IMG/VR virus record: IMGVR_UViG_3300031857_000002
Location: 62,001-126,000 of that record
Direction: 5' to 3' (one strand)
DNA: 64,000 bases
How positions within the stretch are numbered: position 1 is the stretch's first letter; every line of letters starts with the position of its first letter. The position numbers and the translations under genes are program-made. This document shows positions 46,124 to 59,729 of this stretch, piece by piece. The notes beneath the pieces are model-generated. The model was given only the letters and a program-made list of their open reading frames with translations, made no database searches and was not told the origin of the DNA.

Positions 46124-47177
46124 AATAACTCTACGTGACTTTGCAACAGGCGATTTGTTGCCTGTGTACATAGATGTTGCAGACAACAGTCTAAGCCGCC
46201 GTTGGTTAACAGCACTAAATGAATTATTGCAAAACAATTATCATTTGGAAAAGAACTACTGCTGGTTTGGCTGGCCCAACGGTCCACGCACAGCAGAATA
46301 TATCTGTGATCAAATAAATCAATCAATTGCTGCCATTAATTTAGCCGATATGGGCTATCAAATTACAGATCATTTTGATACCTTGAATACCATTACAGCA
46401 GGTGCTGTGGGAGAAGGCCTGCCAGGCGGCAAACTCATACACGATAAACTAAACTGGTTGCATCGTTATTTTGAAGATTTACAAGGCGTTTCAGGTTCAA
46501 TGAGTCCATTTTACACTCGTGCTGATGCTGCCACACGCTGGCATATCCGACAGTTAAATCTCTTGTGTCACGAATACGAAAGTCTAGTGCTGAGCATGCG
46601 CAAGGCACAACACGCACCTGAATGGGTGCGCCCTAGCCAACTCATGTGTTGGCTAAATGCTCCACGTTTTGAACTAGAACCCGAAGACTACGAACTGTTT
46701 GGTATAGAAACAATCAATCGCAGCCTGGGCGGTGTGTATGCGGGAGTTAACAAAGCAGTAGGTAAGCATCACTGGGAAGTGTTCCATGACGAAGGGCGTG
46801 ACAGTCGTATTGACGAATTAACTACCACAAGTCTAAGAGCACAAACAGAAGCCGCAGGAGATTTTGATATAGAGTGGGCAAGAGATCCTGGCAAGTTCCA
46901 TTGGCAACAACAGCAGTTGAATGAGTTTCGAGACTGGCTAGTAGCCAATGGATTTGATCCCGACAACAAAGCACTCACAATAGGACATCCCAAAGTGGCG
47001 CAAGTTGATTTACTCAAGAGCTTTGGTACAGAAGATCACACAGAAATATGGTGTCAATTGAATGATCATTTAGACGTGTATAAAATAGAGACTGATCAGT
47101 GCGAAGCTACATACAACTATCACTGGAGCGACGCAGACTTTAAACAACGACAAATCCAGTGCATACAAGGAGCATAA
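46110..47177 (+). CDS. hypothetical protein, possibly metal-binding
   Basis: Long ORF inside the operon with LHRYFE and LCHEYE motifs. Likely start is the ATG at 46110. Confidence 0.7.
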   Translation: MKQIKITLRDFATGDLLPVYIDVADNSLSRRWLTALNELLQNNYHLEKNYCWFGWPNGPRTAEYICDQINQSIAAINLADMGYQITDHFDTLNTITAGAVGEGLPGGKLIHDKLNWLHRYFEDLQGVSGSMSPFYTRADAATRWHIRQLNLLCHEYESLVLSMRKAQHAPEWVRPSQLMCWLNAPRFELEPEDYELFGIETINRSLGGVYAGVNKAVGKHHWEVFHDEGRDSRIDELTTTSLRAQTEAAGDFDIEWARDPGKFHWQQQQLNEFRDWLVANGFDPDNKALTIGHPKVAQVDLLKSFGTEDHTEIWCQLNDHLDVYKIETDQCEATYNYHWSDADFKQRQIQCIQGA

Positions 47178-47179
47178 TA

Positions 47180-47281
47180 ATGAACTGGATTAAAAACTTA
47201 TACCATAGAATTCGATTAGAAATTCGTTATCGTCGCAAGCTAAAAGAACTGCGCAAAAGAGACCCATTTATCTACAAATGA
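47180..47281 (+). CDS. 33-aa basic peptide ending in DPFIYK, coupled to the carbamoyltransferase
   Basis: Not in the ORF track. Has an AAGGAG SD and reads MNWIKNLYHRIRLEIRYRRKLKELRKRDPFIYK; its TGA overlaps the next ATG (ATGA). Confidence 0.75.
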   Translation: MNWIKNLYHRIRLEIRYRRKLKELRKRDPFIYK

Positions 47282-48753
47282 AAATACTGGGAATTTCAGC
47301 AGGTTTTCACGACGCTGCCGCTACTGTGCTCCAGGATGGCAATATTCTTTTTGCTGGACATTCAGAACGATACTCAAAGCAAAAGAATGATGCCAACATA
47401 CATGCAGATCTACTAAAGGATGCACTGACACACAGAATAGATCATGTGGCCTATTACGAACGTCCGTGGCTGAAACAACTGCGTCAGTGGTATGCAGGAC
47501 AGGGTATTGAGTGGGATAAAATAACACTAAAACAGGTGCTGGAAAAACAGGTGCCTGAAGCCATGCAGTACATGCCTGCCACAAGCACACACAATCATCA
47601 TGCTTGCCATGCGGCAGCAGGATTCCAAACAAGCCCATACGATCGTGCCACTGTGGTGGTAATAGATGCAGTAGGCGAGTTTGACACAATAACAATCTGG
47701 GCGGCTGAATATGATTCAAAAGGCATGGCAAAGTATCGAAAACTTTGGGCACAACATTATCCACATTCAATTGGACTGTTCTACTCTGCGGCTACTAGCA
47801 GTGTTGGCCTACGCCCATTAGACGAAGAGTACATCTTGATGGGTATGGCCGCTTATGGCAATGCTATACAAGCGGTTAGCATGCAAAAACTAGTTGAAGA
47901 TTCAGATCAAATAAGATTCCGTGATAATCTACACACAGGAATAGACAGTCGATATCTGCAGGATCTTGAAGAATTTGATATTGCCTCTGGCGCACAAGCC
48001 ATTGCAGAACAACTAATCAACAGCGTCATGCGCAGAGCACGTGACTTCAAATTCAGCACTAATTTAGTTTACATGGGCGGCGTTGCTCTTAACTGTAGTG
48101 CTAACCGTAATTTAGGAAAGTATTTTGATAACATATGGATTATGCCTTGTCCTAGCGACGCTGGCAGTAGCCTGGGTGCGGCAGCACTGGCATACAGGAA
48201 ACAGATACATTGGACCAATGCCTACTTGGGTCGCAATATCCCTGGTGATTATCCTGTGGACGATATTATCACTGGCCTGCTACATGATAAAATTGTGGGT
48301 GTGGCCAGTGGTCGTGCCGAATTTGGGCCCAGGGCTCTGGGCAATAGATCACTATTGGCAGACCCCCGTGGCGCAGACATAAAAGATCGTGTGAATGACA
48401 TCAAGCGCAGACAGCAATTCAGACCGTTTGCGCCAGTCATTTTGGAGGAGCATGTTGATATGTATTTTGATATGCCTCATGGCTTCCATAACAGTAGGTA
48501 TATGCAAGTCATTGCTCGCTGTAGGCATCCTCACATATTTCCTGCTATCGTTCATAAGGACGGCACTAGTAGGGTACAGACTGTTCCCCAAGACGGATCG
48601 GGTATAAGGCAGCTACTAGAAGCATGGTACCGGGCAACAGGTTGTCCTATGTTGCTTAACACAAGTCTTAACATACGTGGAGAACCCATGGTAAATGATC
48701 GCGCAGACGCTGATAGATTTGAACAATTATACAGAGTAAAAGTCTGCTCATGA
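47278..48753 (+). CDS. O-carbamoyltransferase (NodU/CmcH/TobZ family)
   Basis: FHDAAA, ERYSKQK, HHACHAAAG, GGVALNC, EFGPRALGNRS, FRPFAP and LLNTSLN motifs. Confidence 0.95.
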   Translation: MKILGISAGFHDAAATVLQDGNILFAGHSERYSKQKNDANIHADLLKDALTHRIDHVAYYERPWLKQLRQWYAGQGIEWDKITLKQVLEKQVPEAMQYMPATSTHNHHACHAAAGFQTSPYDRATVVVIDAVGEFDTITIWAAEYDSKGMAKYRKLWAQHYPHSIGLFYSAATSSVGLRPLDEEYILMGMAAYGNAIQAVSMQKLVEDSDQIRFRDNLHTGIDSRYLQDLEEFDIASGAQAIAEQLINSVMRRARDFKFSTNLVYMGGVALNCSANRNLGKYFDNIWIMPCPSDAGSSLGAAALAYRKQIHWTNAYLGRNIPGDYPVDDIITGLLHDKIVGVASGRAEFGPRALGNRSLLADPRGADIKDRVNDIKRRQQFRPFAPVILEEHVDMYFDMPHGFHNSRYMQVIARCRHPHIFPAIVHKDGTSRVQTVPQDGSGIRQLLEAWYRATGCPMLLNTSLNIRGEPMVNDRADADRFEQLYRVKVCS

Positions 48754-50024
48754 GCGATAAAGTATTTCCAATAAAGAGTGACACAGCCTGTTTGTTAAAA
48801 TGGGCGTGGTCAACAGTGTATCTAGGGCAGGGCACAAGCTCTAGTTGTCATAGAACAGATCAAGCACCTATTCCTGTAGACAACTTTGCGAGTTTTCACA
48901 ATCTACCCAATAAAGTACGTGCTAGAGAAATGATGCGTCGTGGAGAATGGCCACAAGAAGGCTGTCAGTACTGTGAAAAGATTGAGGCAGCAGGCGGACT
49001 CAGTGATAGACAATATCAATTAAAAGCTGGACACGAACGAGACCGCACTCCTGAAGAATTAATTGTTGATCCAGAAACAAATGAAGTAGTGCCCACTATC
49101 TTAGAAGTGTACTTCAGCAACGTGTGTAACATGGCTTGCTTGTACTGCGGAAGTCACTTTAGTACAAAATGGGAAGAAGAAAACAAAAGATTTGGCATAT
49201 TTGAACAAGGGCGTGTGAAGTTTGGATTTAATCAGCCCTCAAACCCCAATTACGAAAAACAACTGGCAGACTTTTGGCAGTATCTAGAAGATAAAGATCG
49301 CTATAAACACATACGCTACTATCAGATCTTGGGCGGGGAACCGTTCTTTCAAAAGGAATTTGATACCAGCTTGGACTTCTGGGAAGCACACCCTAACCCT
49401 GAACTAACGTTCAATATCATTACCAACTTGAAAGTGCCCACAAAGAAGTTCCGAGCATATATTGATCGCTTTGGGGCAATGGTTGAATCAGGTGCGTTGA
49501 AAAGATTACAAATTACAGGCAGCTTAGACGCATGGGGACCGCAAGAAGAATATGTACGCTGGGGACTAGACTTGGCTGAATGGCAAGAGAACTGGGAATA
49601 TCTCTTGGATAAAGACTGGGTTGTGATGTGTATGAATACAGCTATTAGTGCATTGACAATCAAAACACTTCCTGATCTAGTGGAACGCATTAATGGCTGG
49701 AACGCTAGACGCAATCCCTGGAATCCCATCAGCTTCAGTTTTATGAGTGTAATGACACCGCCCGAAATGGTTCCGGACATATTTGGTGCAGGTGTATTTG
49801 ATCAGGATTTTGAGCGTGTGTTAGCAGCCATGCCCACAGACAAGCCAGGATCCCAAGATGCACGTGAACACATGGCAGGCATCATGCGACAGATATCTGC
49901 AGGCCCACGTGATGTTTCACGTATAGAAGATCTAAAGGTTTATTTGACTGAAATAGATCGACGCAGAGGAACCCGTTGGCAAGACTTGTTCCCTTGGCTG
50001 GATCAGCCTTTTATTGTGGTATGA
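48750..50024 (+). CDS. radical SAM enzyme 7
   Basis: CNMACLYC and LGGEP motifs; N-terminal CLLKW, SCHR, CQYC. Visibly paralogous to 41641-43023. Confidence 0.92.
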   Translation: MSDKVFPIKSDTACLLKWAWSTVYLGQGTSSSCHRTDQAPIPVDNFASFHNLPNKVRAREMMRRGEWPQEGCQYCEKIEAAGGLSDRQYQLKAGHERDRTPEELIVDPETNEVVPTILEVYFSNVCNMACLYCGSHFSTKWEEENKRFGIFEQGRVKFGFNQPSNPNYEKQLADFWQYLEDKDRYKHIRYYQILGGEPFFQKEFDTSLDFWEAHPNPELTFNIITNLKVPTKKFRAYIDRFGAMVESGALKRLQITGSLDAWGPQEEYVRWGLDLAEWQENWEYLLDKDWVVMCMNTAISALTIKTLPDLVERINGWNARRNPWNPISFSFMSVMTPPEMVPDIFGAGVFDQDFERVLAAMPTDKPGSQDAREHMAGIMRQISAGPRDVSRIEDLKVYLTEIDRRRGTRWQDLFPWLDQPFIVV

Positions 50025-51085
50025 TTGTCTGTGGGATTGACTTGTTGATCAACGCCCAGGAACTGCTGTAATCCAGAAGAAAAGAATATGTGAAACGAGT
50101 ACTTTTCGTAGGTTTCACGTAAAAATTCAGCAGCCGCTATATGCTCAGGATTGTCGGGGTCGAGCACATCATGCTCGCTGAAGTCGTGCCATGTGCCCCA
50201 ATCTTCTAGCTTGGTAATGCTGCCAATAAATCCAAAATACAAACACAGTTCACAAAAGTTCTTCATGTCTCTGTAGTTGTTTTTTTGCATGACCATTGTG
50301 AGTGCTACATTATGACTGGAACCGTCGGGTTTACTGGTGTTTTCTTTGAGGAATATAAAGTTATCCATGAGCTGTTCCCAGCGTCCGCCCAGTCTAACTT
50401 GTTCATACACATCTGCTGAACCTGCATCTATGCTAATCAAATATTCGTCAATGTGCGCTGTAACAGGATTGTCTGTGAGTTGTTTGCGCAATAACAAGCC
50501 ATTAGTAAACAGTTTGATCCACTGCTTTTCGCGTGGTTTGTATCTGTGTAGCAACGGACGCATGATACTGCTGGCAAGTGGATCGCCATTGCCACTCATG
50601 ATAATTCTGCAAGGTTGTTCAAACTGCTCTAGCATGTCCACTAGATGATTGACCCATGCTAGCTTTTCTTCGTATTTGTCACCACTGGTAATCATTACAG
50701 CATCTTTTCTACAGCTGGGACAATGTAAATTACAGCTTTCATCTATGTTGATACTGATAGTGTATTCAGTTTCAACCATGTCATAGTGCATGACACCACA
50801 ACGTGTGACAGCACAGTTATCAAATGTTCGGTTGTCAATGCTTTGTTGTAGAGCCTGTGCTGTAGGGCTGGCCCACACATCTTCCAGTCGTACAAAGTCT
50901 GTGATTTTGCCCACACTGATAGGCAACCACAGTTCACAACCACACACAAAACAATCGCCTTTCCAATCTACTAGCAGTTTCCTACTGGGTGCGTTACAGT
51001 GATGATCTACCTGTAACTTCAAGTCCTTGTTACGTGGAACAGTGTTCCAGTGAAACTGATTTTCAATTGGAATAACAAACTTCAT
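50003..51085 (-). CDS. radical SAM enzyme 8
   Basis: CNLHCPSC and GNGDP motifs; N-terminal CNAP...GDCFVCGC...CAVTRC. Likely start is the ATG at 51085 (ATGA overlap). Confidence 0.9.
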   Translation of the reverse strand: MKFVIPIENQFHWNTVPRNKDLKLQVDHHCNAPSRKLLVDWKGDCFVCGCELWLPISVGKITDFVRLEDVWASPTAQALQQSIDNRTFDNCAVTRCGVMHYDMVETEYTISINIDESCNLHCPSCRKDAVMITSGDKYEEKLAWVNHLVDMLEQFEQPCRIIMSGNGDPLASSIMRPLLHRYKPREKQWIKLFTNGLLLRKQLTDNPVTAHIDEYLISIDAGSADVYEQVRLGGRWEQLMDNFIFLKENTSKPDGSSHNVALTMVMQKNNYRDMKNFCELCLYFGFIGSITKLEDWGTWHDFSEHDVLDPDNPEHIAAAEFLRETYEKYSFHIFFSSGLQQFLGVDQQVNPTDNHTTIKG

Positions 51086-52101
51086 AGATATGTCTCTAAA
51101 CCGCCACGACGTGTCAAGTCCTGTGTACAGCATGAGATACCACCATCCCAGAAGTAGCTGTGACGCAGTTCACTGATAATAGGATTGATTCTGTGCTTTT
51201 TGCAGTAGTCAAACACTTCTTTGTTGTAGGCACTGAAGATGACGTTTTCTTCGTCTAGTGCCAAGCAGTTGACGTCAAACACAGTTTCGGCAACAAAGCC
51301 AGTCCACTTATTTAGATATTTGTCCACAAATTGTGTAAATTCGGGTGTGGGTGTTTGTCCTTGCACATACCATGCACCGGGGCTTTGTTCGTACTTGAAC
51401 TTGCCTATTTCCATGGCAGCCCAGATCGAGCTGTCCCAGATTTTACAAACGTCCCATCCTGGGAAGTCTTTGGCCAGATCCAAGTTGACATCGTGTTTGC
51501 TGCTCAGTAGTACGCCAGGCTTGAGAATGGCAAACACAGCATCACCGTGTCCGTCAGTAATTGCTTCGTGTATTCTGTACTCAGGACCCAGAACATTGTC
51601 CACGATCCATCGTGTTTGATCTGGACGTAAAAAGTCTGAATTGTCAAAAAACACATCGCGACCCACACGCACAATACAACTAGCACTGGCCCCGTTGAGG
51701 ATACAGTTTTCGTCCCAGCGCCCTTGATGCGGGTTAACCACTTGATCCTTGTAGTCAGCACAAATTTCATCTAGTTCTTCCATGTTTAGCACACGTAGCA
51801 GTTTGTCGCCCAGGGTGATTTGCCAATCGCGTGGGGTCAGTGGCGGCAGCGGAGCACCTCCTCCTTCAGTTTGATGCCAAATAAATTGATCTTTACTGGG
51901 CAGATTGGGCCTGCGTACTCGTGCACCATATTTCTCAATTGTGCGTTGTAGGCCGTTGAGATCTTCTTCAGTTTCGTAGAGAATCTGTTGCAGTTGATTA
52001 CGCACTTGTGGATTGTCGATAAAGTCAAAGTAATCAGGTGAGTAGGCGCGACCCACAATGACCTCTTCAAGAGGCTGCCAACTGGTGTAAGAATTAATCA
52101 T
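51082..52101 (-). CDS. amidinotransferase (StrB1/glycine amidinotransferase family)
   Basis: NSYTSWQPLEEVIVG, PRD, GHGD, FDVNCL and RHSYFWDGGISCCT (catalytic Cys region). Confidence 0.85.
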   Translation of the reverse strand: MINSYTSWQPLEEVIVGRAYSPDYFDFIDNPQVRNQLQQILYETEEDLNGLQRTIEKYGARVRRPNLPSKDQFIWHQTEGGGAPLPPLTPRDWQITLGDKLLRVLNMEELDEICADYKDQVVNPHQGRWDENCILNGASASCIVRVGRDVFFDNSDFLRPDQTRWIVDNVLGPEYRIHEAITDGHGDAVFAILKPGVLLSSKHDVNLDLAKDFPGWDVCKIWDSSIWAAMEIGKFKYEQSPGAWYVQGQTPTPEFTQFVDKYLNKWTGFVAETVFDVNCLALDEENVIFSAYNKEVFDYCKKHRINPIISELRHSYFWDGGISCCTQDLTRRGGLETYL

Positions 52102-53248
52102 AGGATTGTAGTTTAGTGAATAAAGTATTTAAACGATGGCTCTTGTTGGCCAAAAATAACTGCTGGTTGTGTTGTATATCGTCCCAACAGCGTAGAAAAT
52201 GCCCATGCGGGTCTTGTTGTATTTGCTTGAGTGTGTGTTTTACTTTTAACCAACGTTGTGTGTTGTTGGTTTCCGTGTCGTATGTGTTATCTAGTACTGA
52301 ATCAAATGTTTTATAACCCAAATCACGCAAGCATTGTAAGCTGCCTGCGGGTGCTACTAGCACAAATGGCTGGCCATTCTTTATGGGCTTGAAAGTCTTT
52401 TCGGTTAGGAATGTGCCGCCAGAGCCGTCGGCATCAAAATGAGTTTCTAACACTAGATTAAAGTATGCATTGGCATAGTGCTCATTAACCGTTAAACTGT
52501 GATCATTATGTTGTTCAGTAGTTAAATTGTCACAGGTATAAGGTCCTGCTCGCATAAAGGCAGGAATGTCTATGCCAGGCAACTGCTCTATGGGATTGTC
52601 GCTGGGCGCATCACCTAGTACTAAATTAGTATTGTAACTCCACAGGCTGTGCCCCAACATGCCAGATTGTTGCAAGTCAGACATGACACTAGCCCGCCAC
52701 CATTTGTGTGTTCTACTGAGCGCAACAAATTCGTACGTTCTAGCACAACGATGCAACTCAGCAGGTGCAACTGCTCGATTCCTTCGCCAATACAGTAGTT
52801 CATGATCAGGAAAGTACACAAAGCCTGGTACGGAATCTGCTGTGGTGTTACCTGAAACAAATCTATAACAGGCAACGGACAAGTTGTGTTGCACACACAA
52901 CGCATCTAGTCTAGCTTTGATGTTGTGGGGATTATCGCCTTCGTGATAGTAAAACAACACAGTGATCGTGCCTTGGCAAACGCCCTGCATGATGCTGGGC
53001 TGTATTAGTGCAAAGTAGTCTATCGAGAAATCAAAGAAGCCCAAGCCTATGGTGTAGTATTGTCCACCATCAGTGTTTAGTGAGTATTCAACGCCATGAT
53101 CGTCCATGTGAGCAAACAGTTCTGCAGGTGTGGTATGTGGCCAGTGTTGCCCAAACTCACGCCAGGCCTGTGTATAAGGTCTAGCTTGATGCTGTGCCAA
53201 TGCAGGATATGGCTGACCTTTAATAATCGAATCAGCTACGAAGTTCAT
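52094..53248 (-). CDS. glycosyltransferase-like protein (VxET/TEK family), paralog 2
   Basis: FNLVLETHF...FLTEKTFKPI..GQPF...LRDLGYKTFD. Confidence 0.5.
   Translation of the reverse strand: MNFVADSIIKGQPYPALAQHQARPYTQAWREFGQHWPHTTPAELFAHMDDHGVEYSLNTDGGQYYTIGLGFFDFSIDYFALIQPSIMQGVCQGTITVLFYYHEGDNPHNIKARLDALCVQHNLSVACYRFVSGNTTADSVPGFVYFPDHELLYWRRNRAVAPAELHRCARTYEFVALSRTHKWWRASVMSDLQQSGMLGHSLWSYNTNLVLGDAPSDNPIEQLPGIDIPAFMRAGPYTCDNLTTEQHNDHSLTVNEHYANAYFNLVLETHFDADGSGGTFLTEKTFKPIKNGQPFVLVAPAGSLQCLRDLGYKTFDSVLDNTYDTETNNTQRWLKVKHTLKQIQQDPHGHFLRCWDDIQHNQQLFLANKSHRLNTLFTKLQSYD
52126..52133 (-). promoter_or_regulatory. possible late promoter (TTTAAATA) upstream of the amidinotransferase
   Basis: TAAATA core 24 nt before the ATG at 52101, inside the upstream CDS. 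It could be a chance match. Confidence 0.35.
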
Positions 53249-54338
53249 TTAGCATGTTAATCAGTTCAGGCCACAGGATGTTTTCCAGCCCAGTGCCATA
53301 AAAGTGTTCAAAGTTGTGTTCTACAATAGGCAGACAAGCACGATGTATTTGTTGCCGTTCAGTCTCACTTAGTGAATCTAGATCTTTTAACAGTTGGGTA
53401 ACTTTTTCAATTCGCTTGACGTCATCTTCTTCTAGGTCATAGCTTTCATCAAATATGCCGTCAAATGTTCGAAATCCATAACTGCGCATGTACTCTAGGC
53501 TGTGTGCAGGCGCTACCAACGCAAAAGGCATTTCCAGTGCAATAGCCTTGAATGTTTTTTCAGTAATATGTAATCTCTTGCCAAAGTAAACAGTTTCGGT
53601 AGGAACATACACAAGACTGTCTTGCGCCTCTGCATAATTGCTTAACCAACAGCTGGTCATGACTTGAGTTTCTTCACCTACAAATAATCTTGGCAACTCT
53701 GCTGCCAAGAACACTTGCTCTATGTCAGGATATATGTTATTATACTTGAGTGCTATTTGTGAGATGTCCACGTGTTCGTAAGGACATATCCTAGGAGCCG
53801 AAATATAATTCTTTTCTAACCCTTGCTTGAATATATTATACAAAAACAAAACTCTATGATCGCGTTTGCCAGCAACAATTCTATTGGGGCTCATAAAAGT
53901 GCGAGTAGGTGTTCTATCAACGGCTCTGGGAATCAAAAAAGTTTTATCGTACCCGCGAAACCAGTCTTTACAGGCCCATCCGTGATAAAAATAATAATGA
54001 CTTTTCCAACCATATATATTACGAAGTTTTTCAACATATTCCCCTTGCTCACTAACAATTACATGTCCACCTTCAAAAGGATCGTTGTTATCTACTCTTA
54101 TTTGCTGAGTATACTCTTTAACTTTTTGAAACAATGGTCTGTGAATATCTAAATGTACAGGTTCTTGATCGTGAAAAAATACAAAATTATTTTCTGGGAT
54201 ATCATCTCTCCCATAGTTGAACAATGCGTCGGGGTCAGTGCATCCAGGAGGATCGCAAAAATATGCTTGGGTACCAGGAATATGTTTGTTAATCCAGGGC
54301 CAAAAAGTGTTGTTGTAAATTTCGTCTATTCTAATCAT
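53232..54338 (-). CDS. glycosyltransferase-like protein (VxET/TEK family), paralog 3
   Basis: VYVPTETVY...HITEKTFKAI..EMPF...MRSYGFRTFD. Confidence 0.5.
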   Translation of the reverse strand: MIRIDEIYNNTFWPWINKHIPGTQAYFCDPPGCTDPDALFNYGRDDIPENNFVFFHDQEPVHLDIHRPLFQKVKEYTQQIRVDNNDPFEGGHVIVSEQGEYVEKLRNIYGWKSHYYFYHGWACKDWFRGYDKTFLIPRAVDRTPTRTFMSPNRIVAGKRDHRVLFLYNIFKQGLEKNYISAPRICPYEHVDISQIALKYNNIYPDIEQVFLAAELPRLFVGEETQVMTSCWLSNYAEAQDSLVYVPTETVYFGKRLHITEKTFKAIALEMPFALVAPAHSLEYMRSYGFRTFDGIFDESYDLEEDDVKRIEKVTQLLKDLDSLSETERQQIHRACLPIVEHNFEHFYGTGLENILWPELINMLNELRS

Positions 54339-57300
54339 GTTTGATATTTTTTATTCAGGTAAGAAGCCAGGGTTGTTTGCGCATGAGCGTGCGGCAGATA
54401 GTATTGAGCATGCACAAAGTTTGAGTCGCACAAGGTTCTTTTGGTGGGTGTCATACTTATGTGACTACTCTAGCTGGGATTGGTTTTACGAACCGCCACC
54501 TTGGCAAGCTCAACAGAACCATGTGTGGCCGTCAAAGTGGCATCAGTACTCGGGCACATGCCTCATACCCAAGGCACCTACAGACCAATGGAACTTTCAT
54601 AAAGATGATGTAGCAACACGGCCTGTGGAACAAAACTGGAAGGTGTTGCATGCTATTGATCATGCACAGTTTGATTTCTCCTGGCATCCACACCCATTAG
54701 ACCCACCATACATTTACGTGTGGGGCAATCAGCACTGGCCTGGGGAAAAGATGCCCACAGTGGAATATCATGTGGAAGGCGCAACAGAACGCAAGTACAT
54801 GGACTGGTCGGCCTCACTACGCCCAAGAACTACAAATTGGACAACACCTACCTTGATTGATCCTAATAGTGTAGATTATTCTTGGCAACCAGACCCACAA
54901 GACCCTCCCTACATCTACGAGTTTGCTACACAATGGCAGCCCAATGGAGGTGCTGTGTACACAGTACCAGGCGCAACTGAACGAAAGTATGTGCAAATTC
55001 AACATCGTAGATTGCCCAACAAGGCAGCGTTTACCAAGCTAGAGGTTGTGCAGGACTTTGACTATTCATGGCACCCAGACAACACTGAGCTGCCTTACAC
55101 GTATGTGTTTGGTAATCAGCATTGGGCAGGTACCGAAATGCCCACAATGGTGTATAAGATGACCGGCGCCACACAAGAGAAGTTTGTGGACAATGTTGTT
55201 GCTCGCCTGGCCAGTAACATGGGCAATTGGGAGTTTGGTGAAGACATTGACCAGGAAGCATGGGACTGGACCTGGGTGCCTAATCCCAAAGAGCCGCCTT
55301 ACACGTATGTGTTTGGTAATCAGTGGAATCCCCCAGAGTTCAAAGCCAGTATAAAATATCATGTGCCTGGAGCGACCAACGTCAAGTACATGGAACGCCG
55401 CACCACAAGATTACCACAGCCCGCACAGTTTAGATACAATGTTGCTGTGAGCAAGTTTGATTACTCGTGGGAGCCCAATCCTTTTGATCCGCCTATGACC
55501 TATGTGTTTGGCAATCAATGGAACTCGGCTGTGCTAGAACCCACTGTGGTCTACAGCACCGGCGGCACAGAAATCAAGTATGTGGATGATATCATTGCCA
55601 CAGTAGCACAAGATGTTGGTGCTTGGGAATTGTTGGATAACATTGAATCGTTTGATTACTCCTGGAGACCCAATCCCACAGACCCTCCTTATATCTATGT
55701 GTTTGGTAATCAGTGGCTCACACCAGAACAACGCCCTGCACTACAGTATCGAGTTGAAGGTGCCACACAAATCAAATACATGGATCATCCACGGGCACAA
55801 CGTCGTGGCGATCACACACGATTTGTACAGCACTATCCTGCAGATTTTGATTGGTCCTGGGAACCAGAGCCAGGATCTCCGCCTTACATGTATGTGTTTG
55901 GCAATCAATACTATTCAGCAGAAGTCATGCCCACTGTAGAATATCGCATGCCTGGCGCAACTGAATACAAGTACATGGATCTAGCCGCACAATTGATGCC
56001 AAATCACAGCAATCATTGGCATACACTTGTTGATTGTGAATGGGATTATGCCTGGCGCCCGGAGCCTGGATCTCCCGCCTATATCTATGTGTTTGGCAAT
56101 CAATGGTGGTCAGCTGAGAAAATGCCCACAGTGGAATATCACATGCCTGGCGCTACAGAACGCAAGTACATGTCAGGACCTGTAGCACAGTTACTAATAG
56201 ACATGAGCAAGTGGACTATTCCTGAACATGTGAACACTACTGACATGGACTTTTCATGGTGTCCGGATCCAGGCGAACCTCCTTACATTTATCAGTTTGC
56301 CACACAGCACCAAAAGACAGGTGGCCCACAGTATCGCATGCCAGGGGCCACTGAGTTCAAGTATGTGGACATGATGCGAGCCGAAGTCAAGCGAGAAGCC
56401 GCTCCCATATTTGAAATAGATCACTTAGATGGTGCCGCAGGCCAGATTCCTGATGTAGTCAAGAAAGTGCGTTACTTTGACAACTACAGAGATACACTAA
56501 TACGCCTAGCTAAAAGTTTAGCAGGTGAATACGAACATGTATGGGTGTGTAGCAGTATATGTGATTACACAGACTTTGATTTTTCGTGGCATCCCGAAAC
56601 ATGGCAGTCAACAATGTTGCATGTGTTTGCATCGGATAAAGAAAAATTTGGCGACACATTCTATATGCATGTGCCTACCTTTGCTGAACGTGCTGAAAAG
56701 AAAGCCTTATTAGAATGGTATAGCGTAAACTATGTGCCACGCCGGAGTGTACCACGTAGACCCATGCCTGTGATTCAACACACAGCAGACAGTCATGTGG
56801 ATGCAGTTAAAAACATAGCATGGGCAGGACCACTTGCTACATTTACCACAACAGATTATGTTCCGGGTAACATGATTACTGTTCCGCTATGGCGCAAAGA
56901 AACCAAAACTATTGTTCCATTAAGTGCAGGTGCATCAAGTGTGATTGTGCCAAGAGTAGCAGTAGGAGATGTTCGTACACAGCTATATGATTATGCTTAC
57001 ATAGACAAAACACATCGTATGTTAAAAGATCATCCCTTGGATATTGTGTTTATTTCAAATGGCGAACCCTATGCTGAGTTTAACTATGAACACTTGAAGT
57101 GGGCTGTGCAAATGGAAGGGTTAGATTGTAATCACATACATCACTCAAAGGGCGTGAACGGACGTGTGGCAGCATATCAGGCAGCTGCCAGAATGAGCAC
57201 GACACCTTGGTTCTTTGCAGTGTTTGCCAAGCTAGAAGTTGATCATAGATTTGACTGGACTTGGCAACCAGATCGCATGCAACAGCCCAAGCACTATATC

Positions 57301-57735
57301 TTCCATGCACACAATCCTGTGAATGGTCTAGTGTACGGTCATCAGGCCATGATTGCCTACAACAAAAAAATGGTGCTAGAGAACACAGGTAACGGCTTGG
57401 ACTTTACCATGGACCAACCGCACGAAGTTGTGCCTATCATATCAGGCACAGCCAACTACACAGAGTCACCTTGGATGGCCTGGCGTACAGCATTCCGCGA
57501 AGTACTTAAACTCAAGCACAGTTTACCTGATGTGGAAAATGAGTACAGACTCAACATGTGGCTTAGCGATGCAGGAGAAGTCAAGAATGCAGAGTGGAGC
57601 CGCTTTGGAGCAGAGGATGCTGTAGAATACTACGATCAAGTTGCTGGAGATTTTGCAGCTCTTAAGAAGAGCTATGAATGGACCTGGCTGGCAAGTTATG
57701 CGTTTATGCGACGCAGTCTAACACCTGATCGCTGA
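54337..57735 (+). CDS. W/P/Y-repeat protein with a C-terminal glycosyltransferase-like domain
   Basis: Nine ~65-aa repeats. The C-terminal DIVFISNGEP...GVNGRVAAYQAAA...AWRTAFRE is paralogous to 34975-35907. Confidence 0.75.
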   Translation: MFDIFYSGKKPGLFAHERAADSIEHAQSLSRTRFFWWVSYLCDYSSWDWFYEPPPWQAQQNHVWPSKWHQYSGTCLIPKAPTDQWNFHKDDVATRPVEQNWKVLHAIDHAQFDFSWHPHPLDPPYIYVWGNQHWPGEKMPTVEYHVEGATERKYMDWSASLRPRTTNWTTPTLIDPNSVDYSWQPDPQDPPYIYEFATQWQPNGGAVYTVPGATERKYVQIQHRRLPNKAAFTKLEVVQDFDYSWHPDNTELPYTYVFGNQHWAGTEMPTMVYKMTGATQEKFVDNVVARLASNMGNWEFGEDIDQEAWDWTWVPNPKEPPYTYVFGNQWNPPEFKASIKYHVPGATNVKYMERRTTRLPQPAQFRYNVAVSKFDYSWEPNPFDPPMTYVFGNQWNSAVLEPTVVYSTGGTEIKYVDDIIATVAQDVGAWELLDNIESFDYSWRPNPTDPPYIYVFGNQWLTPEQRPALQYRVEGATQIKYMDHPRAQRRGDHTRFVQHYPADFDWSWEPEPGSPPYMYVFGNQYYSAEVMPTVEYRMPGATEYKYMDLAAQLMPNHSNHWHTLVDCEWDYAWRPEPGSPAYIYVFGNQWWSAEKMPTVEYHMPGATERKYMSGPVAQLLIDMSKWTIPEHVNTTDMDFSWCPDPGEPPYIYQFATQHQKTGGPQYRMPGATEFKYVDMMRAEVKREAAPIFEIDHLDGAAGQIPDVVKKVRYFDNYRDTLIRLAKSLAGEYEHVWVCSSICDYTDFDFSWHPETWQSTMLHVFASDKEKFGDTFYMHVPTFAERAEKKALLEWYSVNYVPRRSVPRRPMPVIQHTADSHVDAVKNIAWAGPLATFTTTDYVPGNMITVPLWRKETKTIVPLSAGASSVIVPRVAVGDVRTQLYDYAYIDKTHRMLKDHPLDIVFISNGEPYAEFNYEHLKWAVQMEGLDCNHIHHSKGVNGRVAAYQAAARMSTTPWFFAVFAKLEVDHRFDWTWQPDRMQQPKHYIFHAHNPVNGLVYGHQAMIAYNKKMVLENTGNGLDFTMDQPHEVVPIISGTANYTESPWMAWRTAFREVLKLKHSLPDVENEYRLNMWLSDAGEVKNAEWSRFGAEDAVEYYDQVAGDFAALKKSYEWTWLASYAFMRRSLTPDR
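54670..56370 (+). repeat. nine tandem ~65-aa coding repeats, consensus FD(Y/W)SWxPxPxDPPYxYVFGNQxxxxExxPTVxYxxPGATExKYxD
   Basis: Counted directly in the translation. The DNA core TATGTGTTTGG(T/C)AATCA recurs. Confidence 0.9.
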
Positions 57736-58834
57736 TGTACTCAACTTCTAGATCTGTTAGTTCAGGGTAGATAGGTAAGCTGAGTACACGCCGAGCAAGA
57801 CTAGAACTTGCTGCCAACATATCAGGACCTGGATATGCACGATACAAACTCATTTCATGCAAGGGATTTGCATAGTGAACTCGTGTGTCAATTTTACGCA
57901 GAGAGAGATTGGCCTTTAGCGTATCTCGACCATCAACATCTATTACAAACTTATGCACAGCATGATTGTGTGCATTAGAGTCGTTGATCAAACAGCGTAT
58001 GTTTGCATTTTTAAATCTTTCACCCCAGTGATCAGCAATACTTTGTCTACGTGTCTGCCATTGATCAATGTGTTTTGCTTTGACCAACATATGAGCACAA
58101 TCTAGTTCACTCATGCGGCTATTGGTACCAGGATTACGATGTGTAGGTTTGCCATTGTCTCTCCAGGCTCTTGCATATTCTGCTAGATCCAAATTGTCTG
58201 TAACAACAGCACCACCGTTGCCATAACAAGCAAGGTTTTTCATGGGATCAAAGCTAATTGCGCCACCGCCTCGCCCGGTTCTTTGACCATCCGCTGCCAG
58301 CCAATGCTGTGCGGCATCTTCAATTATAACAGTATCGTGTCGTAGCCATTCATTCCACGCACGAAGATTACCGTGATGAGTCATGGACGCACCATACAAG
58401 CCAACTAGCACTACAGCTTGATAACTCAAGTCATGTGGAATTTTATTAACATCTATTAAGCCGTGTATGTCTGTGTCAATGATGTGTATATCCCACCCTG
58501 CACGTATAAATGCGTTGGCTGTGGCCACATAAGTCATCGAGGGTATTAACACAGTGGGAGGATGTGGTATGGGTGACTCCATAGCCCAGTAACTGGCCAG
58601 GATCTCAAGTGCGTGGGTACCTGAGTGGCAAGTTACTGCATAGCGCACACGATTTTTTTTAGCAAGCCAAGATTCAAACTCAACGGTGTTGTTGCCGTTC
58701 ATGAGTTGACCACTGCGAAGTACTTCGTCAGTGGCGTCTAAAATCTCTGTGCGGAGATTGTTATACTGCTTTCGGAGACCAGTAAACGGAATTGTTAAGC
58801 CAGTTGAAGTAATTTTGAAATCCTTCTTGTACAT
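57704..58834 (-). CDS. DegT/DnrJ/EryC1/StrS-family PLP aminotransferase
   Basis: SGTHALE, TYVATANA, IIEDAAQ, SFDPMKNL..YGNGGA, NSRMSE and LSLPIYPEL motifs. Confidence 0.95.
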   Translation of the reverse strand: MYKKDFKITSTGLTIPFTGLRKQYNNLRTEILDATDEVLRSGQLMNGNNTVEFESWLAKKNRVRYAVTCHSGTHALEILASYWAMESPIPHPPTVLIPSMTYVATANAFIRAGWDIHIIDTDIHGLIDVNKIPHDLSYQAVVLVGLYGASMTHHGNLRAWNEWLRHDTVIIEDAAQHWLAADGQRTGRGGGAISFDPMKNLACYGNGGAVVTDNLDLAEYARAWRDNGKPTHRNPGTNSRMSELDCAHMLVKAKHIDQWQTRRQSIADHWGERFKNANIRCLINDSNAHNHAVHKFVIDVDGRDTLKANLSLRKIDTRVHYANPLHEMSLYRAYPGPDMLAASSSLARRVLSLPIYPELTDLEVEYISDQVLDCVA

Positions 58835-59729
58835 CTACTTTGGGATCATATCCTAGAATGGTTCTAGCACGATCAATATTTAATGCGCCACGTGACGGGA
58901 AGTCTGCGTCTTTGTCTTTGCACTCAATAGTACCCTTGCCAACAATTTTAACAATCATTTCTGCGGCTTCTAACAAGCTCACACTATGTGATTTAGTAAT
59001 GTTATAGGTGCTGTTACGACTCATAATACGAGTAGCAGCCGCCACAATGCCATCTGCGGCATCATCTACATAGGTAAAGTCTAGCGTCTCCCCTGCCCCA
59101 TTAACTTTGAGAACGCCTCCTCGCATGGCGCCGAGCATAAATTTTGCCACAACTCGGTCTTCCACATCCAAGGGGCCGTATACAGCACTAGGCCTAATAA
59201 CAGCGTAATCGAAAGCGCCGCGGCGATGGTAGTCTTTGACAATGTCTTCTCCAGTTAATTTTAAGATGCCATATTGGCCAATGGGTTTACAGTCGTAGTC
59301 TTCTTCTACTTGATCTTCAAAGTCGCCATACACCATTGAACTGGAAATGTACACCACCCGTTCCACACCGTGCTTTTTGGCACTCTCACAAACGTTGATC
59401 AAACCTTCCATCATAACACGGCTACCCCAGGCAGGGTTGGCATTGACAACTTTCTGTCGGGGAAAACTTGCCATGTGAATAATCACTTCAGGCTTGTGTT
59501 TGTTTACTAACCAATCAAAGTTGTCAGCATCGGTAATATCAATATGATAGATATTTTTGCCTGATATCTTCTTTAACCGTTCCGACATCAAGTAGTCAAG
59601 TTCCGCTTGTGGAATGATTCCGTAGTTAGTACGTGTGTCTGTTATGATCACTTCGTGTTCTAGAGATTCTAATCGTTGTACCACGTTGTGGCCAATGAGC
59701 CCTAGGCCGCCTGTTACTAATATTTTCAT
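58761..59729 (-). CDS. NAD-dependent NDP-sugar epimerase/dehydratase (extended SDR)
   Basis: MKILVTGGLGLIG, SSSMVYG, YGILK (YxxxK) and DFTYVDD motifs. Likely start is the ATG at 59729. Confidence 0.93.
   Translation of the reverse strand: MKILVTGGLGLIGHNVVQRLESLEHEVIITDTRTNYGIIPQAELDYLMSERLKKISGKNIYHIDITDADNFDWLVNKHKPEVIIHMASFPRQKVVNANPAWGSRVMMEGLINVCESAKKHGVERVVYISSSMVYGDFEDQVEEDYDCKPIGQYGILKLTGEDIVKDYHRRGAFDYAVIRPSAVYGPLDVEDRVVAKFMLGAMRGGVLKVNGAGETLDFTYVDDAADGIVAAATRIMSRNSTYNITKSHSVSLLEAAEMIVKIVGKGTIECKDKDADFPSRGALNIDRARTILGYDPKVDVQEGFQNYFNWLNNSVYWSPKAV

What the first reader, a model, noticed from the sequence alone, without database searches (positions are those of the whole stretch)
47278..59729. 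Epimerase, aminotransferase, amidinotransferase and carbamoyltransferase: streptidine/bluensidine-like logic in a virus
Seen: all four enzymes are intact and lie within 12.5 kb. Known: oxidation, DegT-family transamination and StrB1-type amidino transfer build guanidino-cyclitols in streptomycin biosynthesis; bluensidine also carries a carbamoyl group; TobZ-type enzymes carbamoylate aminoglycosides. Inference: the product is a cationic guanidino- and carbamoyl-sugar, which could alter virion charge or receptor binding, or shield DNA. The amidinotransferase reads GGISCCT where GGFHC is usual, hinting at altered specificity.
Basis: partly seen in the sequence, partly recalled or inferred. Interest (0 to 1): 0.75.

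Follow-up and report, generated by a model that had tools for sequence, protein, structure and literature searches.

The report
Phage glycan-tailoring island with amidinotransferase
A freshwater jumbo phage carries intact carbamoyl-, amidino- and amino-transferase genes and a sugar epimerase in its variable tail-side island; they look like a kit for decorating sugars or glycans, not a streptomycin-like cyclitol pathway, and the amidinotransferase's substrate is still unknown.

Summary
All four genes are intact, keep their catalytic motifs and evolve under purifying selection. The GGISCCT motif is real and fixed in the orthologues.

The window lies in a 320-kb freshwater T4-like myophage. The genes sit in its variable island behind the baseplate and a 4775-aa structural protein.

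- **Gene layout:** the four genes lie in three transcription units on both strands.
- **Amidinotransferase (AMID1):** it overlaps two upstream divergent GT-B glycosyltransferase paralogues. It belongs to an almost virus-only clade, equidistant from AGAT, StrB1, HsvA and SxtG. It lacks the AGAT triad Asp and is the most conserved gene of the block.
- **Linkage elsewhere:** outside this phage lineage it is not linked to the aminotransferase or the carbamoyltransferase (1 of 79 loci each).
- **Precursor chemistry:** the SDR is epimerase-type, not a keto-forming dehydratase. The genome has no inositol-phosphate synthase, inositol dehydrogenase or sugar nucleotidyltransferase.
- **StrB1-like paralogue:** a truly StrB1-like gene exists 167 kb away, beside a UDP-sugar dehydrogenase.
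- **Recurrence:** radical SAM + amidinotransferase + glycosyltransferase also occurs in a cyanophage and in Campylobacter phages.

Best reading: a glycan-tailoring toolkit, possibly making an amidino-sugar. The acceptor and the target are not known.

The parts
47278..48753 (+). O-carbamoyltransferase (NodU/CmcH/TobZ family), 491 aa
   Evidence: Pfam Carbam_trans_N and Carbam_trans_C. PHROG 1601. Best PDB hits NovN 1e-47, GdmN, TobZ 5e-39. Motifs intact.
48750..50024 (+). Radical SAM protein with an N-terminal twitch domain; a variable cassette
   Evidence: NCBIfam NF033640 N_Twi_rSAM 9e-67, above cut-off. CNMACLYC motif. Has an 81% orthologue at this position only in L103/L104; the other four relatives give only 29-32% matches to rSAM paralogues elsewhere.
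50003..51133 (-). Radical SAM/SPASM-type protein, last gene of the minus-strand operon; a variable cassette
   Evidence: Pfam Radical_SAM 3.8e-10 and SPASM 2.3e-5. CNLHCPSC motif. Absent in L005, L006, L007 and L102.
51082..52101 (-). AMID1: divergent amidinotransferase, 339 aa, of a virus-specific clade; GGISCCT at the nucleophile
   Evidence: PDB sequence hits are amidinotransferases only. AF2 model pLDDT 91. Foldseek: HsvA, AGAT, StrB1 and SxtG at about 1e-20, DDAH and ADI at about 1e-10. D92, H185, D187 and C324 conserved; S139 at the AGAT Asp254 position.
52094..53248 (-). BCb: divergent GT-B fold glycosyltransferase paralogue, 384 aa; its end overlaps the AMID1 start by 8 nt
   Evidence: No Pfam, PHROG or PDB sequence hit. 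AF2 model pLDDT 87. All top Foldseek hits are GT-B glycosyltransferases. AFDB: GT1 family 2.7e-14, TM 0.63/0.71, and fucosyltransferases.
53232..54338 (-). BCc: paralogue of BCb, 368 aa, first gene of the BCc-BCb-AMID1 operon
   Evidence: Same family by self-BLAST, 5 copies in the genome. Shares the invariant E..EK..G..YD motifs in alignment A2. Overlaps BCb by 17 nt.
54337..57735 (+). 1132-aa protein with at least 6 repeats of about 65 aa and a 440-aa C-terminal domain; function unknown; divergent from BCc
   Evidence: Repeats W.P.P..P.Y.Y.F[AG][NT]Q. No Pfam, PHROG or PDB hit. Length 798-1211 aa in relatives.
57704..58834 (-). DegT/DnrJ/EryC1/StrS-family PLP aminotransferase, 376 aa
   Evidence: Pfam 3.1e-63. 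Best PDB relatives are the sugar 3-aminotransferases DesV (2oga) 3.5e-40, QdtB 1e-36 and WbpE 2.5e-28. The only full-length DegT in the genome.
58761..59729 (-). Extended SDR, NDP-sugar 4-epimerase type, 322 aa
   Evidence: Pfam Epimerase 1.5e-43. Best PDB hits UDP-GlcA 4-epimerase 2e-25, GalE, UXS. SSSMVYG and YGILK present, no dehydratase D-E pair.
36565..47177 (+). Upstream same-strand run: six N-twitch radical SAM paralogues, a third BC glycosyltransferase paralogue (37928-39064), a 194-aa ORF and a conserved 355-aa unknown (46110-47177) that precedes the carbamoyltransferase
   Evidence: Self-BLAST families. Pfam and NCBIfam. CxxxCxxC motifs. Synteny in relatives.

Best explanation
The finding lies in the variable accessory island that follows the baseplate and giant structural-protein genes of a 320-kb freshwater T4-like myophage. 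The island is a toolkit for making and attaching modified sugars. It is not a four-step streptidine-like pathway.

The functional core is the minus-strand operon BCc-BCb-AMID1: two divergent GT-B glycosyltransferases followed by a highly conserved amidinotransferase.

Proposed chemistry of AMID1 (inferred):
1. Cys324 takes the amidino group from L-arginine as a thiouronium intermediate.
2. His185, Asp92 and Asp187 hold the guanidinium.
3. The amidino group passes to a primary amine on a sugar nucleotide or on the glycan built by the neighbouring transferases. This gives a guanidino (cationic) sugar.

Inferred roles of the other genes:
- The epimerase-type SDR and the DegT aminotransferase form a separate operon. 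They supply an epimerised or aminated NDP-sugar from host precursors.
- The carbamoyltransferase, in a third unit, O-carbamoylates a hydroxyl using carbamoyl phosphate and ATP.
- The flanking radical SAM paralogues add further tailoring.

The glycan most likely ends up on the infected cell's envelope or on virion proteins.

Shown: gene identities, folds, catalytic residues, operon layout, conservation and recurrence of the module.
Inferred: the arginine donor, the sugar acceptor, any link between the DegT product and AMID1, and the final target.
For: - Phage and island context: baseplate hub, wedge and a 4775-aa virion protein lie just upstream. The same layout, with glycosyltransferases and radical SAM cassettes, is described for pelagi- and cyanomyophages (PMC7029224).
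- AMID1 is an amidinotransferase by sequence and fold, and is closer to transferases than to hydrolases. AGAT, StrB1, HsvA and SxtG score 1e-31 to 1e-34 with the family profile. Foldseek gives about 1e-20 for these against about 1e-10 for DDAH and ADI. Cys, His and both guanidinium-binding Asp are invariant or nearly so in 63 homologues.
- AMID1 is functional and strongly constrained: 84-89% aa identity in relatives where BCb is 41-60%, DegT 61-84%, SDR 56-82%, the carbamoyltransferase 64-78% and ThyX 65-82%. dN is 0.10-0.14, the lowest of the seven genes compared.
- Coupling to glycosyltransferases: overlaps of 17 nt (BCc/BCb) and 8 nt (BCb/AMID1). The BC model matches only GT-B glycosyltransferases. 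BC is the window family most often found near homologous amidinotransferases, in 16 of 79 distant viral loci. Three of the five BC copies in this genome lie within 3 kb of an amidinotransferase.
- Independent recurrence of the module. Cyanophage S-SCSM2R has one amidinotransferase inside a run of five glycosyltransferases with a DegT fragment and a radical SAM gene, and another next to KdsA/KdsB. Campylobacter phage CP220 has baseplate genes, then four radical SAM genes, an amidinotransferase, a radical SAM gene, two GT-A transferases and a PAP2 phosphatase (PMC2853527).
- The paralogue AMID3 sits beside a UDP-glucose/GDP-mannose-dehydrogenase-family gene, a BC paralogue and a GT2. That pairing is kept in six other viral contigs.
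- The block ThyX-SDR-DegT-(BIG)-BCc-BCb-AMID1-...-carbamoyltransferase is syntenic in four divergent relatives.
- Contigs from three metatranscriptome libraries cover AMID1 and the rSAM4-AMID1 and AMID1-BCb-BCc junctions. This is weak evidence, because DNA carry-over is not excluded.
Against: - No acceptor has been identified, and nothing shows a guanidino sugar exists.
- AMID1 lacks the Asp of the AGAT Cys-His-Asp triad: Ser139 here, and variable S/N/D across the family. It also has Ser for the usual His before the Cys, so its chemistry may differ.
- The AGAT Arg322 position, which I recall as binding the arginine carboxylate, aligns to a non-conserved position in the family profile (HMMER alignment). 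The donor is therefore not certain.
- Most distant homologues (32, 26 and 16 of 79 loci) sit next to three small unknown proteins instead of sugar genes: c1, an ATE_C-like c2 and DUF6614.
- AMID1's high conservation next to fast-evolving glycosyltransferases fits a conserved small-molecule substrate as well as it fits a sugar nucleotide.
- BC fold matches in PDB are weak (E 1e-4 to 1e-3, TM 0.3-0.46). The top one is the DNA-modifying T4 beta-glucosyltransferase.
- Synteny within one phage lineage is not independent evidence of a shared pathway.
Confidence: 0.45

Rival explanations
1. The four enzymes make one product. The SDR and DegT make an NDP-amino sugar, AMID1 converts that amine to a guanidine, and the carbamoyltransferase carbamoylates the same sugar. 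The result is a cationic guanidino- and carbamoyl-sugar.
For: All four genes are intact and conserved together in four divergent relatives. The chemistry is formally compatible. In one distant contig (L082) a DegT gene converges on an A1-type amidinotransferase. S-SCSM2R has a DegT fragment four genes from an amidinotransferase.
Against: The genes form three transcription units on both strands. Outside the lineage, DegT and the carbamoyltransferase each occur near the amidinotransferase in 1 of 79 loci. The SDR is epimerase-type and gives no keto sugar for DegT. DegT resembles 3-aminotransferases, whose usual oxidase or isomerase partners are absent. Synonymous divergence is mosaic between the AMID1-BC operon and the flanking genes, which suggests separate histories.
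Confidence: 0.2
2. AMID1 makes a small guanidino metabolite from arginine, such as guanidinoacetate, homoarginine or an amidinated polyamine as HsvA does. Possible uses are DNA condensation in the large capsid or host takeover. The sugar genes nearby would be unrelated neighbours.
For: All characterised relatives except StrB1 act on amino acids, polyamines or small intermediates, and HsvA is the top structural hit by a hair. AMID1 is much more conserved than the adjacent glycosyltransferases. Most distant homologues have no sugar genes beside them. The S-SCSM2R homologue was detected in purified virions (PMC12801897).
Against: Gene overlap with two GT-B genes. Association with glycosyltransferases recurs in three unrelated phage groups. 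AMID3 pairs with a UDP-sugar dehydrogenase. No polyamine genes were seen next to any copy.
Confidence: 0.2
3. The radical SAM arrays and the amidinotransferase modify peptides or virion proteins, for example tail fibres, converting lysine or ornithine side chains to homoarginine or arginine. This would be RiPP-like maturation, not sugar chemistry.
For: SPASM/twitch radical SAM enzymes are typical peptide maturases. The genome has 19 paralogues, nine beside the finding. The island adjoins tail-fibre-like genes. Radical SAM genes and an amidinotransferase travel together in Campylobacter phages.
Against: No precursor peptide or recognition element was found. No amidinotransferase is known to act on peptides (my knowledge). 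Twitch radical SAM enzymes also act on sugars and cyclitols, for example BtrN (my knowledge). Glycosyltransferases are part of every recurrence.
Confidence: 0.1
4. A true streptidine/bluensidine-like guanidino-cyclitol is made.
For: A StrB1-like paralogue exists in the genome: 1bwd 2e-62, with the FDAAN-type Asp, HxD and GGGFHC all kept. The top PDB hit of DegT carries the name glutamine-scyllo-inositol transaminase. BtrN-type twitch radical SAM dehydrogenases act on aminocyclitols (my knowledge).
Against: The genome has no inositol-phosphate synthase and no Gfo/Idh/MocA dehydrogenase. The StrB1-like gene is 167 kb from the finding and is paired with a UDP-sugar dehydrogenase, not cyclitol genes. 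AMID1 has no special affinity to StrB1.
Confidence: 0.03
5. The product decorates phage DNA (base hypermodification), as the reader's 'shield DNA' option suggests.
For: ThyX lies in the same operon as SDR and DegT. The top PDB fold hit of BC is T4 beta-glucosyltransferase.
Against: The genome record (92% complete) has no ThyA/dCMP-hydroxymethylase-family gene and no TGT/DpdA. The BGT hit cannot be distinguished from other GT-B hits.
Confidence: 0.04

Closest known systems
L-arginine:glycine amidinotransferase (AGAT), StrB1, HsvA, SxtG and Arg:Lys amidinotransferase (pentein-fold amidinotransferases)
   Same: Same fold: TM 0.67-0.68, E 1e-20 to 1e-22. The N-terminal SY.EW.PLEEVIVGRA motif, the catalytic Cys, the His, both guanidinium-binding Asp and the C-terminal D..RRG..Y tail are shared.
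   Different: Only 17-20% identity, and no Pfam hit. Ser replaces the triad Asp (AGAT 254) and the His before the Cys. By my count from the alignments, there are about 37 extra residues between the conserved Trp (W216) and the invariant Asn (N278) relative to AGAT; the family profile's positions 231-277 have no PDB counterpart and include conserved W266, G268 and E272. The FWDGG motif is specific to the clade. The clade is almost confined to viruses: at least 600 IMG/VR stretches against 12 MAG contigs in 185,579 species genomes.
StrB1, scyllo-inosamine-4-phosphate amidinotransferase of streptomycin biosynthesis
   Same: A paralogue in the same genome, AMID3 at genome 280953-281978 and outside the window, is specifically StrB1-like: 214 bits against 101 for AGAT, with all catalytic motifs kept.
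   Different: AMID1, the gene in the finding, is not closer to StrB1 than to the others. AMID3's neighbours are a UDP-sugar dehydrogenase, a GT-B, a GT2 and a UvdE-like gene, not cyclitol enzymes.
TobZ / NovN / GdmN / NodU O-carbamoyltransferases
   Same: Both Pfam domains are present, and the HxxxH and GRxEFGPRALGNRS motifs are kept.
   Different: At 491 aa it is shorter than the 576-702 aa of the solved enzymes. It belongs to the phage 'Nol-like' group PHROG 1601. Its acceptor is unknown.
Host recognition cluster (hypervariable island) of pelagimyophages and cyanomyophages
   Same: It sits in the structural region after the giant structural protein. It contains tail-fibre-like genes, glycosyltransferases, LPS-type sugar genes and radical SAM cassettes that come and go between relatives.
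   Different: Here the phage is a 320-kb freshwater phage of unknown host, without psbA. It carries far more radical SAM paralogues (19) and three amidinotransferases.
Radical SAM + amidinotransferase clusters of Campylobacter phages CP220/CPt10, and the glycosyltransferase-radical SAM-amidinotransferase run of cyanophage S-SCSM2R
   Same: The same gene combination occurs next to baseplate genes or within glycosyltransferase arrays.
   Different: The amidinotransferases are only 24-37% identical to AMID3 and about 29% to AMID1. The glycosyltransferases there are GT-A, GT2 or GT25, not the BC family. Function is untested in all of them.

Membership tests
Amidinotransferase family (AGAT/StrB1 type, pentein superfamily) | Pentein (five-fold beta-beta-alpha-beta propeller) fold, closest to amidinotransferases and not to hydrolases | tested here: met
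   AF2 model pLDDT 91. Foldseek: HsvA, AGAT, StrB1 and SxtG at about 1e-20; DDAH and ADI at about 1e-10.
Amidinotransferase family (AGAT/StrB1 type, pentein superfamily) | Nucleophilic Cys (AGAT Cys407), catalytic His (His303), and the guanidinium-binding Asp pair (Asp170, Asp305) | tested here: met
   C324 and D187 are invariant; H185 and D92 are in 62 of 63 homologues. They align to the AGAT residues. AGAT residue numbers are from my knowledge of the AGAT structure papers.
Amidinotransferase family (AGAT/StrB1 type, pentein superfamily) | Triad Asp (AGAT Asp254, StrB1 Asp179) in the FDAA(D/N) motif | tested here: not met
   The aligned position is Ser139 in AMID1 and is variable in the clade (S 12, N 9, D 9 and others). 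The nearly invariant E272 may substitute; this is an inference.
Amidinotransferase family (AGAT/StrB1 type, pentein superfamily) | Match to the curated family model | tested here: not met
   No Pfam or NCBIfam hit at E up to 10. Homology is seen only by phmmer or a profile against PDB, and by fold.
Amidinotransferase family (AGAT/StrB1 type, pentein superfamily) | Arginine-dependent amidino transfer | not testable with these tools
   Needs an enzyme assay.
StrB1-type inosamine-phosphate amidinotransferase / streptidine pathway | Closer to StrB1 than to other amidinotransferases | tested here: not met
   AMID1: AGAT 52.8, StrB1 48.2, HsvA 44 and SxtG 39 bits. The family profile gives 112-121 bits for all of them. 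Met only by the paralogue AMID3 outside the window.
StrB1-type inosamine-phosphate amidinotransferase / streptidine pathway | Cyclitol-forming partners: inositol-phosphate synthase and inositol/inosose dehydrogenase | tested here: not met
   PF07994 and PF01408 are absent from the 320-kb record, with positive controls. The record is 92% complete, so absence is not absolute.
NodU/CmcH/TobZ O-carbamoyltransferases | Two-domain architecture (Kae1-like N domain and YrdC-like C domain) with metal-binding His motif | tested here: met
   Pfam N domain 123 bits, C domain 165 bits. NHHACHAAAG and GRAEFGPRALGNRS present. PDB hits NovN, GdmN, TobZ.
DegT/DnrJ/EryC1/StrS sugar aminotransferases | Full-length family match and PLP-binding Lys | tested here: met
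   Pfam 214.6 bits over profile positions 3-359 of 360. SFDPMK motif. Nearest are the 3-aminotransferases DesV, QdtB and WbpE.
NDP-sugar 4,6-dehydratase (the keto-forming SDR that would feed DegT) | Catalytic Asp-Glu pair after the active-site Thr/Ser (TDE) | tested here: not met
   The sequence reads SSSMVYG, as in GalE-type 4-epimerases. The best PDB hits are UDP-GlcA 4-epimerase and GalE. The motif rule is from my knowledge of RmlB and GalE.
GT-B glycosyltransferases (the BC paralogues beside AMID1) | Two Rossmann-like domains matching GT-B enzymes | tested here: met
   AF2 pLDDT 87. All 50 top PDB hits are GT-B fold enzymes, almost all of them glycosyltransferases, though weak at 1e-4 to 4e-3. 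AFDB: GT1 family 2.7e-14, TM 0.63/0.71, and GT10 fucosyltransferases. No Pfam hit.
Host recognition cluster of T4-like aquatic myophages | Variable island within the structural module after the giant structural protein, with tail fibres, glycosyltransferases and radical SAM cassettes | tested here: met
   Baseplate and 4775-aa virion protein at 1891-29160. A tail-fibre-like paralogue follows at 29957. Radical SAM cassettes are gained or lost and the repeat protein varies in length between relatives. Description in PMC7029224.

The most novel reading that the evidence does not exclude
Tailed phages widely encode their own clades of amidinotransferases. These work with phage glycosyltransferases and radical SAM enzymes to put guanidino (amidino) groups on sugars of a host-envelope or virion glycan. 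There are thousands of sequence clusters, including a virus-only clade with a remodelled active site and a StrB1-like clade. To my knowledge such a cationic glycan modification is not known outside aminoglycoside-type natural products.
Probability: 0.25. Interest if true: 0.8.

Novelty: new variant of a known kind. Interest (0 to 1): 0.5.

Why it matters
Phage amidinotransferases are abundant and biochemically untouched.
- The AMID1 type has 1622 clusters at 90% identity.
- The StrB1-like type has 6592 clusters.
- At least 600 IMG/VR stretches carry the AMID1-type motif.

They have so far been noted only in genome annotations of Campylobacter phages and one cyanophage.

If they amidinate sugars, phages would have a way to add fixed positive charge to cell-surface or virion glycans. 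That would bear on superinfection exclusion, receptor masking and host range. It would also give enzymes for making guanidino sugars.

If instead they make small guanidino metabolites, that would be a new kind of auxiliary metabolism drawing on host arginine.

Either way, the strong conservation of AMID1 next to fast-evolving glycosyltransferases marks it as the gene to assay first.

Tried and rejected
- **Megablast of the 12.5-kb region against 50,697 phage records:** no match.
- **Pfam and NCBIfam on AMID1:** nothing even at E=10.
- **BC family:** no hit by PHROGs or NCBIfam, by profile against PDB sequences, by Pfam on all 36 members, or by tblastn against cultured phages.
- **The 1132-aa repeat protein:** no Pfam, PHROG or PDB sequence hit. 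The ESM Atlas gives only unnamed viral clusters.
- **The conserved 355-aa protein before the carbamoyltransferase:** only a sub-threshold DUF4962 hit, and no Atlas hit.
- **Promoter and terminator scans:** sigma-70-like sites 41 against 40 expected, terminators 15 against 17. T4 late-promoter TATAAATA occurs 3 times against 2.1 expected. Transcription units therefore rest on strand and overlaps only.
- **Rfam:** no riboswitch or other RNA family in the window. No tRNAs.
not built. Bit scores, profile scores and fold scores against them were used instead.
- **Metatranscriptome check:** only unstranded Logan contigs were available, mostly from relatives at under 95% identity. It shows presence in RNA libraries, not proven transcription.
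- **Active-site geometry:** model coordinates are not exposed, so I could not check whether E272 replaces the missing Asp.
- **Cyanophage host idea:** rejected, because the genome has no psbA.

Full report
**What is at the coordinates**

The region 47278-59729 holds nine ORFs.
- The carbamoyltransferase (47278-48753, +) matches both Pfam carbamoyltransferase domains far above threshold. It also matches the phage 'Nol-like carbamoyltransferase' PHROG over its whole length. Its nearest solved relatives are NovN, GdmN and TobZ.
- The DegT-family aminotransferase (57704-58834, -) scores 3e-63.
- The extended SDR (58761-59729, -) scores 1.5e-43.
- The amidinotransferase (AMID1, 51082-52101, -) has no Pfam or NCBIfam hit at all.

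A phmmer search of PDB with AMID1 returns significant hits (E of 5e-9 or better) only to amidinotransferases: AGAT 3e-13, StrB1 8e-12, HsvA and SxtG.

Motif checks show all four are catalytically plausible. Comparison with relatives shows purifying selection on all four.

**What genome this is**

The window is bases 62001-126000 of a 320,175-bp IMG/VR virus record, about 92% complete.
- Window 1891-29160 encodes virion proteins, a baseplate hub/lysozyme, a gp6-like wedge and a 4775-aa structural protein. It is a large myophage.
- Near-identical DNA is present in many lake and freshwater metagenomes.
- There is no psbA.
- Downstream of the giant structural protein come a tail-fibre-like paralogue, then a long run of radical SAM paralogues, glycosyltransferase-like genes and the finding.

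This is the layout published as the hypervariable 'host recognition cluster' of pelagimyophages and cyanomyophages. That island carries glycosyltransferases, LPS-type sugar genes and radical SAM cassettes (PMC7029224).

**Gene organisation**

The four enzymes are not one operon.
- Unit A (+): radical SAM paralogues, a conserved 355-aa unknown, the carbamoyltransferase and another radical SAM gene.
- Unit B (-), convergent with A: BCc, BCb, AMID1 and a radical SAM gene. The overlaps are 17, 8 and 52 nt.
- Unit C (+), divergent from BCc: a 1132-aa repeat protein.
- Unit D (-), convergent with C: ThyX, a small ORF, the SDR and DegT.

Consensus promoter and terminator scans add nothing above chance.

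**The amidinotransferase**

An AlphaFold model built on 63 homologues is confident, with pLDDT 91.
- It matches HsvA, AGAT, StrB1, SxtG and the Arg:Lys enzyme equally: E 1e-20 to 1e-22, TM 0.67-0.68, 17-20% identity.
- The hydrolases DDAH and arginine deiminase are ten orders of magnitude weaker.
- A family profile gives 112-121 bits to all four solved amidinotransferases. AMID1 therefore has no particular tie to StrB1.

In the family alignment the Cys, the His and both guanidinium-binding Asp are invariant or nearly so. The position of the AGAT triad Asp254 is Ser139 here and variable in the clade. Relative to the solved enzymes the clade has extra residues before the invariant Asn278 (about 37 by my count against AGAT); these include conserved W266, G268 and E272.

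The His-to-Ser change before the Cys is rare in the wider family: HC 108, SC 10, NC 3. It is fixed in the orthologues, where 118 of 120 have Ser before the Cys (108 ISCCT, 9 VSCCT, 1 ISCYT).

The clade is large and almost virus-only.
- 1622 clusters at 90% identity.
- 691 representatives at 50% identity.
- At least 600 IMG/VR stretches.
- Only 12 short MAG contigs among 185,579 species genomes.

**Its partners**

The two genes upstream of AMID1 (BCb, BCc) belong to a five-member paralogue family with no sequence-level annotation.
- The BCb model (pLDDT 87) matches only GT-B glycosyltransferases in PDB, weakly.
- In AlphaFold DB clusters it matches a GT1-family protein at 2.7e-14 (TM 0.63/0.71) and several fucosyltransferases.
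- I therefore treat the BC proteins as divergent GT-B glycosyltransferases.

In 79 distant viral loci carrying an AMID1-type gene, the window families found within 10 kb are as follows.

| Family | Loci (of 79) |
|---|---|
| BC | 16 |
| Radical SAM | 11 |
| SDR | 6 |
| DegT | 1 |
| Carbamoyltransferase | 1 |

The commonest immediate neighbours there are three small unknown proteins.

**Conservation within the lineage**

In four divergent relatives the order ThyX-SDR-DegT-(repeat protein)-BCc-BCb-AMID1-[variable radical SAM cassettes]-carbamoyltransferase is kept. AMID1 is the most conserved gene of the block.

| Gene | aa identity to relatives |
|---|---|
| AMID1 | 84-89% |
| ThyX | 65-82% |
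| DegT | 61-84% |
| Carbamoyltransferase | 64-78% |
| SDR | 56-82% |
| BCb | 41-60% |

AMID1 also has the lowest dN, 0.10-0.14.

**Other copies and other phages**

The genome has three amidinotransferases.
- AMID2 resembles AMID1 in its distance to the solved enzymes.
- AMID3 (genome 280953-281978, outside the window) is specifically StrB1-like: 2e-62 and 214 bits, against 101 bits for AGAT. It keeps the triad Asp, HxD and GGGFHC.
- The AMID3 type has 6592 clusters.
- AMID3 lies beside a UDP-glucose/GDP-mannose-dehydrogenase-family gene, a BC paralogue, a GT2 and a UvdE-like gene.
- The dehydrogenase-AMID3 pair recurs in six other viral contigs, together with an AMID1-type gene. Five of the six also carry a BC gene.

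Cultured phages show the same theme.
- Cyanophage S-SCSM2R has one amidinotransferase next to KdsA/KdsB. It has another inside a run of five glycosyltransferases with a DegT fragment and a radical SAM gene. One of the two was detected in purified virions (PMC12801897).
- Campylobacter phage CP220 has, right after its baseplate genes, four radical SAM genes, an amidinotransferase, another radical SAM gene, two GT-A transferases and a PAP2 phosphatase (PMC2853527).

**Why the streptidine reading fails**

- The genome has no inositol-phosphate synthase, no Gfo/Idh/MocA dehydrogenase and no sugar nucleotidyltransferase, each searched with positive controls.
- The SDR reads SSSMVYG where 4,6-dehydratases have the catalytic Asp-Glu. 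Its nearest structures are UDP-GlcA 4-epimerase, GalE and UXS. It does not supply the keto sugar a DegT enzyme needs.
- DegT is nearest to the 3-aminotransferases DesV, QdtB and WbpE. Their usual isomerase or oxidase partners were not found. A twitch radical SAM dehydrogenase could fill that gap, but that is speculation.
- DNA decoration is also unsupported: no ThyA/hydroxymethylase-family gene and no TGT/DpdA.

**Verdict**

The best-supported reading is a glycan-tailoring island. Its core is two GT-B glycosyltransferases plus a highly constrained, virus-specific amidinotransferase. The epimerase/aminotransferase pair and the carbamoyltransferase are separate tailoring units.

Whether AMID1 amidinates a sugar, and whether that sugar is the DegT product, is not shown. 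A small-metabolite role remains a serious rival.

The idea that phage amidinotransferases relate to aminoglycoside-type chemistry has already been raised in annotation papers. What is new here:
- the size and viral restriction of the AMID1 clade;
- its altered active site;
- its coupling to GT-B genes;
- the separate StrB1-like clade paired with a UDP-sugar dehydrogenase.

Noticed in passing
Genome 280953-281978 (outside the window; L100:6953-7978, minus strand): A third amidinotransferase paralogue is specifically StrB1-like: PDB 1bwd 2e-62, with all catalytic motifs kept. It sits beside a UDP-glucose/GDP-mannose-dehydrogenase-family gene, a BC glycosyltransferase paralogue, a GT2 and a UvdE-like gene. 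The dehydrogenase-amidinotransferase pair recurs in six other viral contigs, and the type has 6592 sequence clusters.
   Followed up: partly
Window 36565-51133, and genome-wide: The 320-kb genome has 19 radical SAM paralogues, 17 of them with CxxxCxxC. Most have an N-terminal Cys-rich twitch/SPASM-like domain (NCBIfam N_Twi_rSAM). Eight lie next to the finding, and cassettes are gained or lost between relatives. Their substrates are unknown.
   Followed up: partly
Window 54337-57735 (+): A 1132-aa protein has at least six repeats of about 65 aa (W.P.P..P.Y.Y.F[AG][NT]Q ... GAT..KY) and a 440-aa C-terminal domain. It has no hit in Pfam, PHROGs or PDB. Its length varies from 798 to 1211 aa in relatives. 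Its start abuts the BCc start on the other strand with no intergenic space.
   Followed up: partly
Window 14833-29160 (+): A 4775-aa virion structural protein (PHROG 10938, 2.9e-283) follows the baseplate wedge gene. It probably corresponds to the giant VrlC-type protein that precedes the host recognition cluster in pelagi- and cyanomyophages.
   Followed up: no
Genome 50796-52062 (outside the window): Three small genes flank AMID1-type amidinotransferases in 16-32 other viral contigs: c1, a c2 with weak similarity to the arginyl-tRNA-protein transferase C domain, and DUF6614. Here they occur together without an amidinotransferase.
   Followed up: no
Window 47278-59729 compared with locus L103: Synonymous divergence is mosaic. 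The carbamoyltransferase, DegT and SDR have pS 0.53-0.56, but AMID1 has 0.70, BCc 0.75 and BCb 0.85. This suggests recombination has given the AMID1-BC operon a different history from its flanks.
   Followed up: no
Genome 163807-165337 (outside the window): A short DegT-like ORF of about 204 aa lies next to a second SDR paralogue. It resembles the short 'AHBA synthase' ORF beside the radical SAM gene in cyanophage S-SCSM2R.
   Followed up: no
Window 49996-50008 (+): A GC-rich hairpin followed by a T-run sits exactly at the convergent junction of the two radical SAM genes (ends at 50024 and 50003). It may be a bidirectional terminator, but the scan as a whole found no more sites than chance.
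   Followed up: no
Window 63121-64000 (-), continuing beyond the window: A DUF2201 / VWA-like metallopeptidase-type protein lies downstream of the ThyX operon. It is unrelated to the finding.
   Followed up: no
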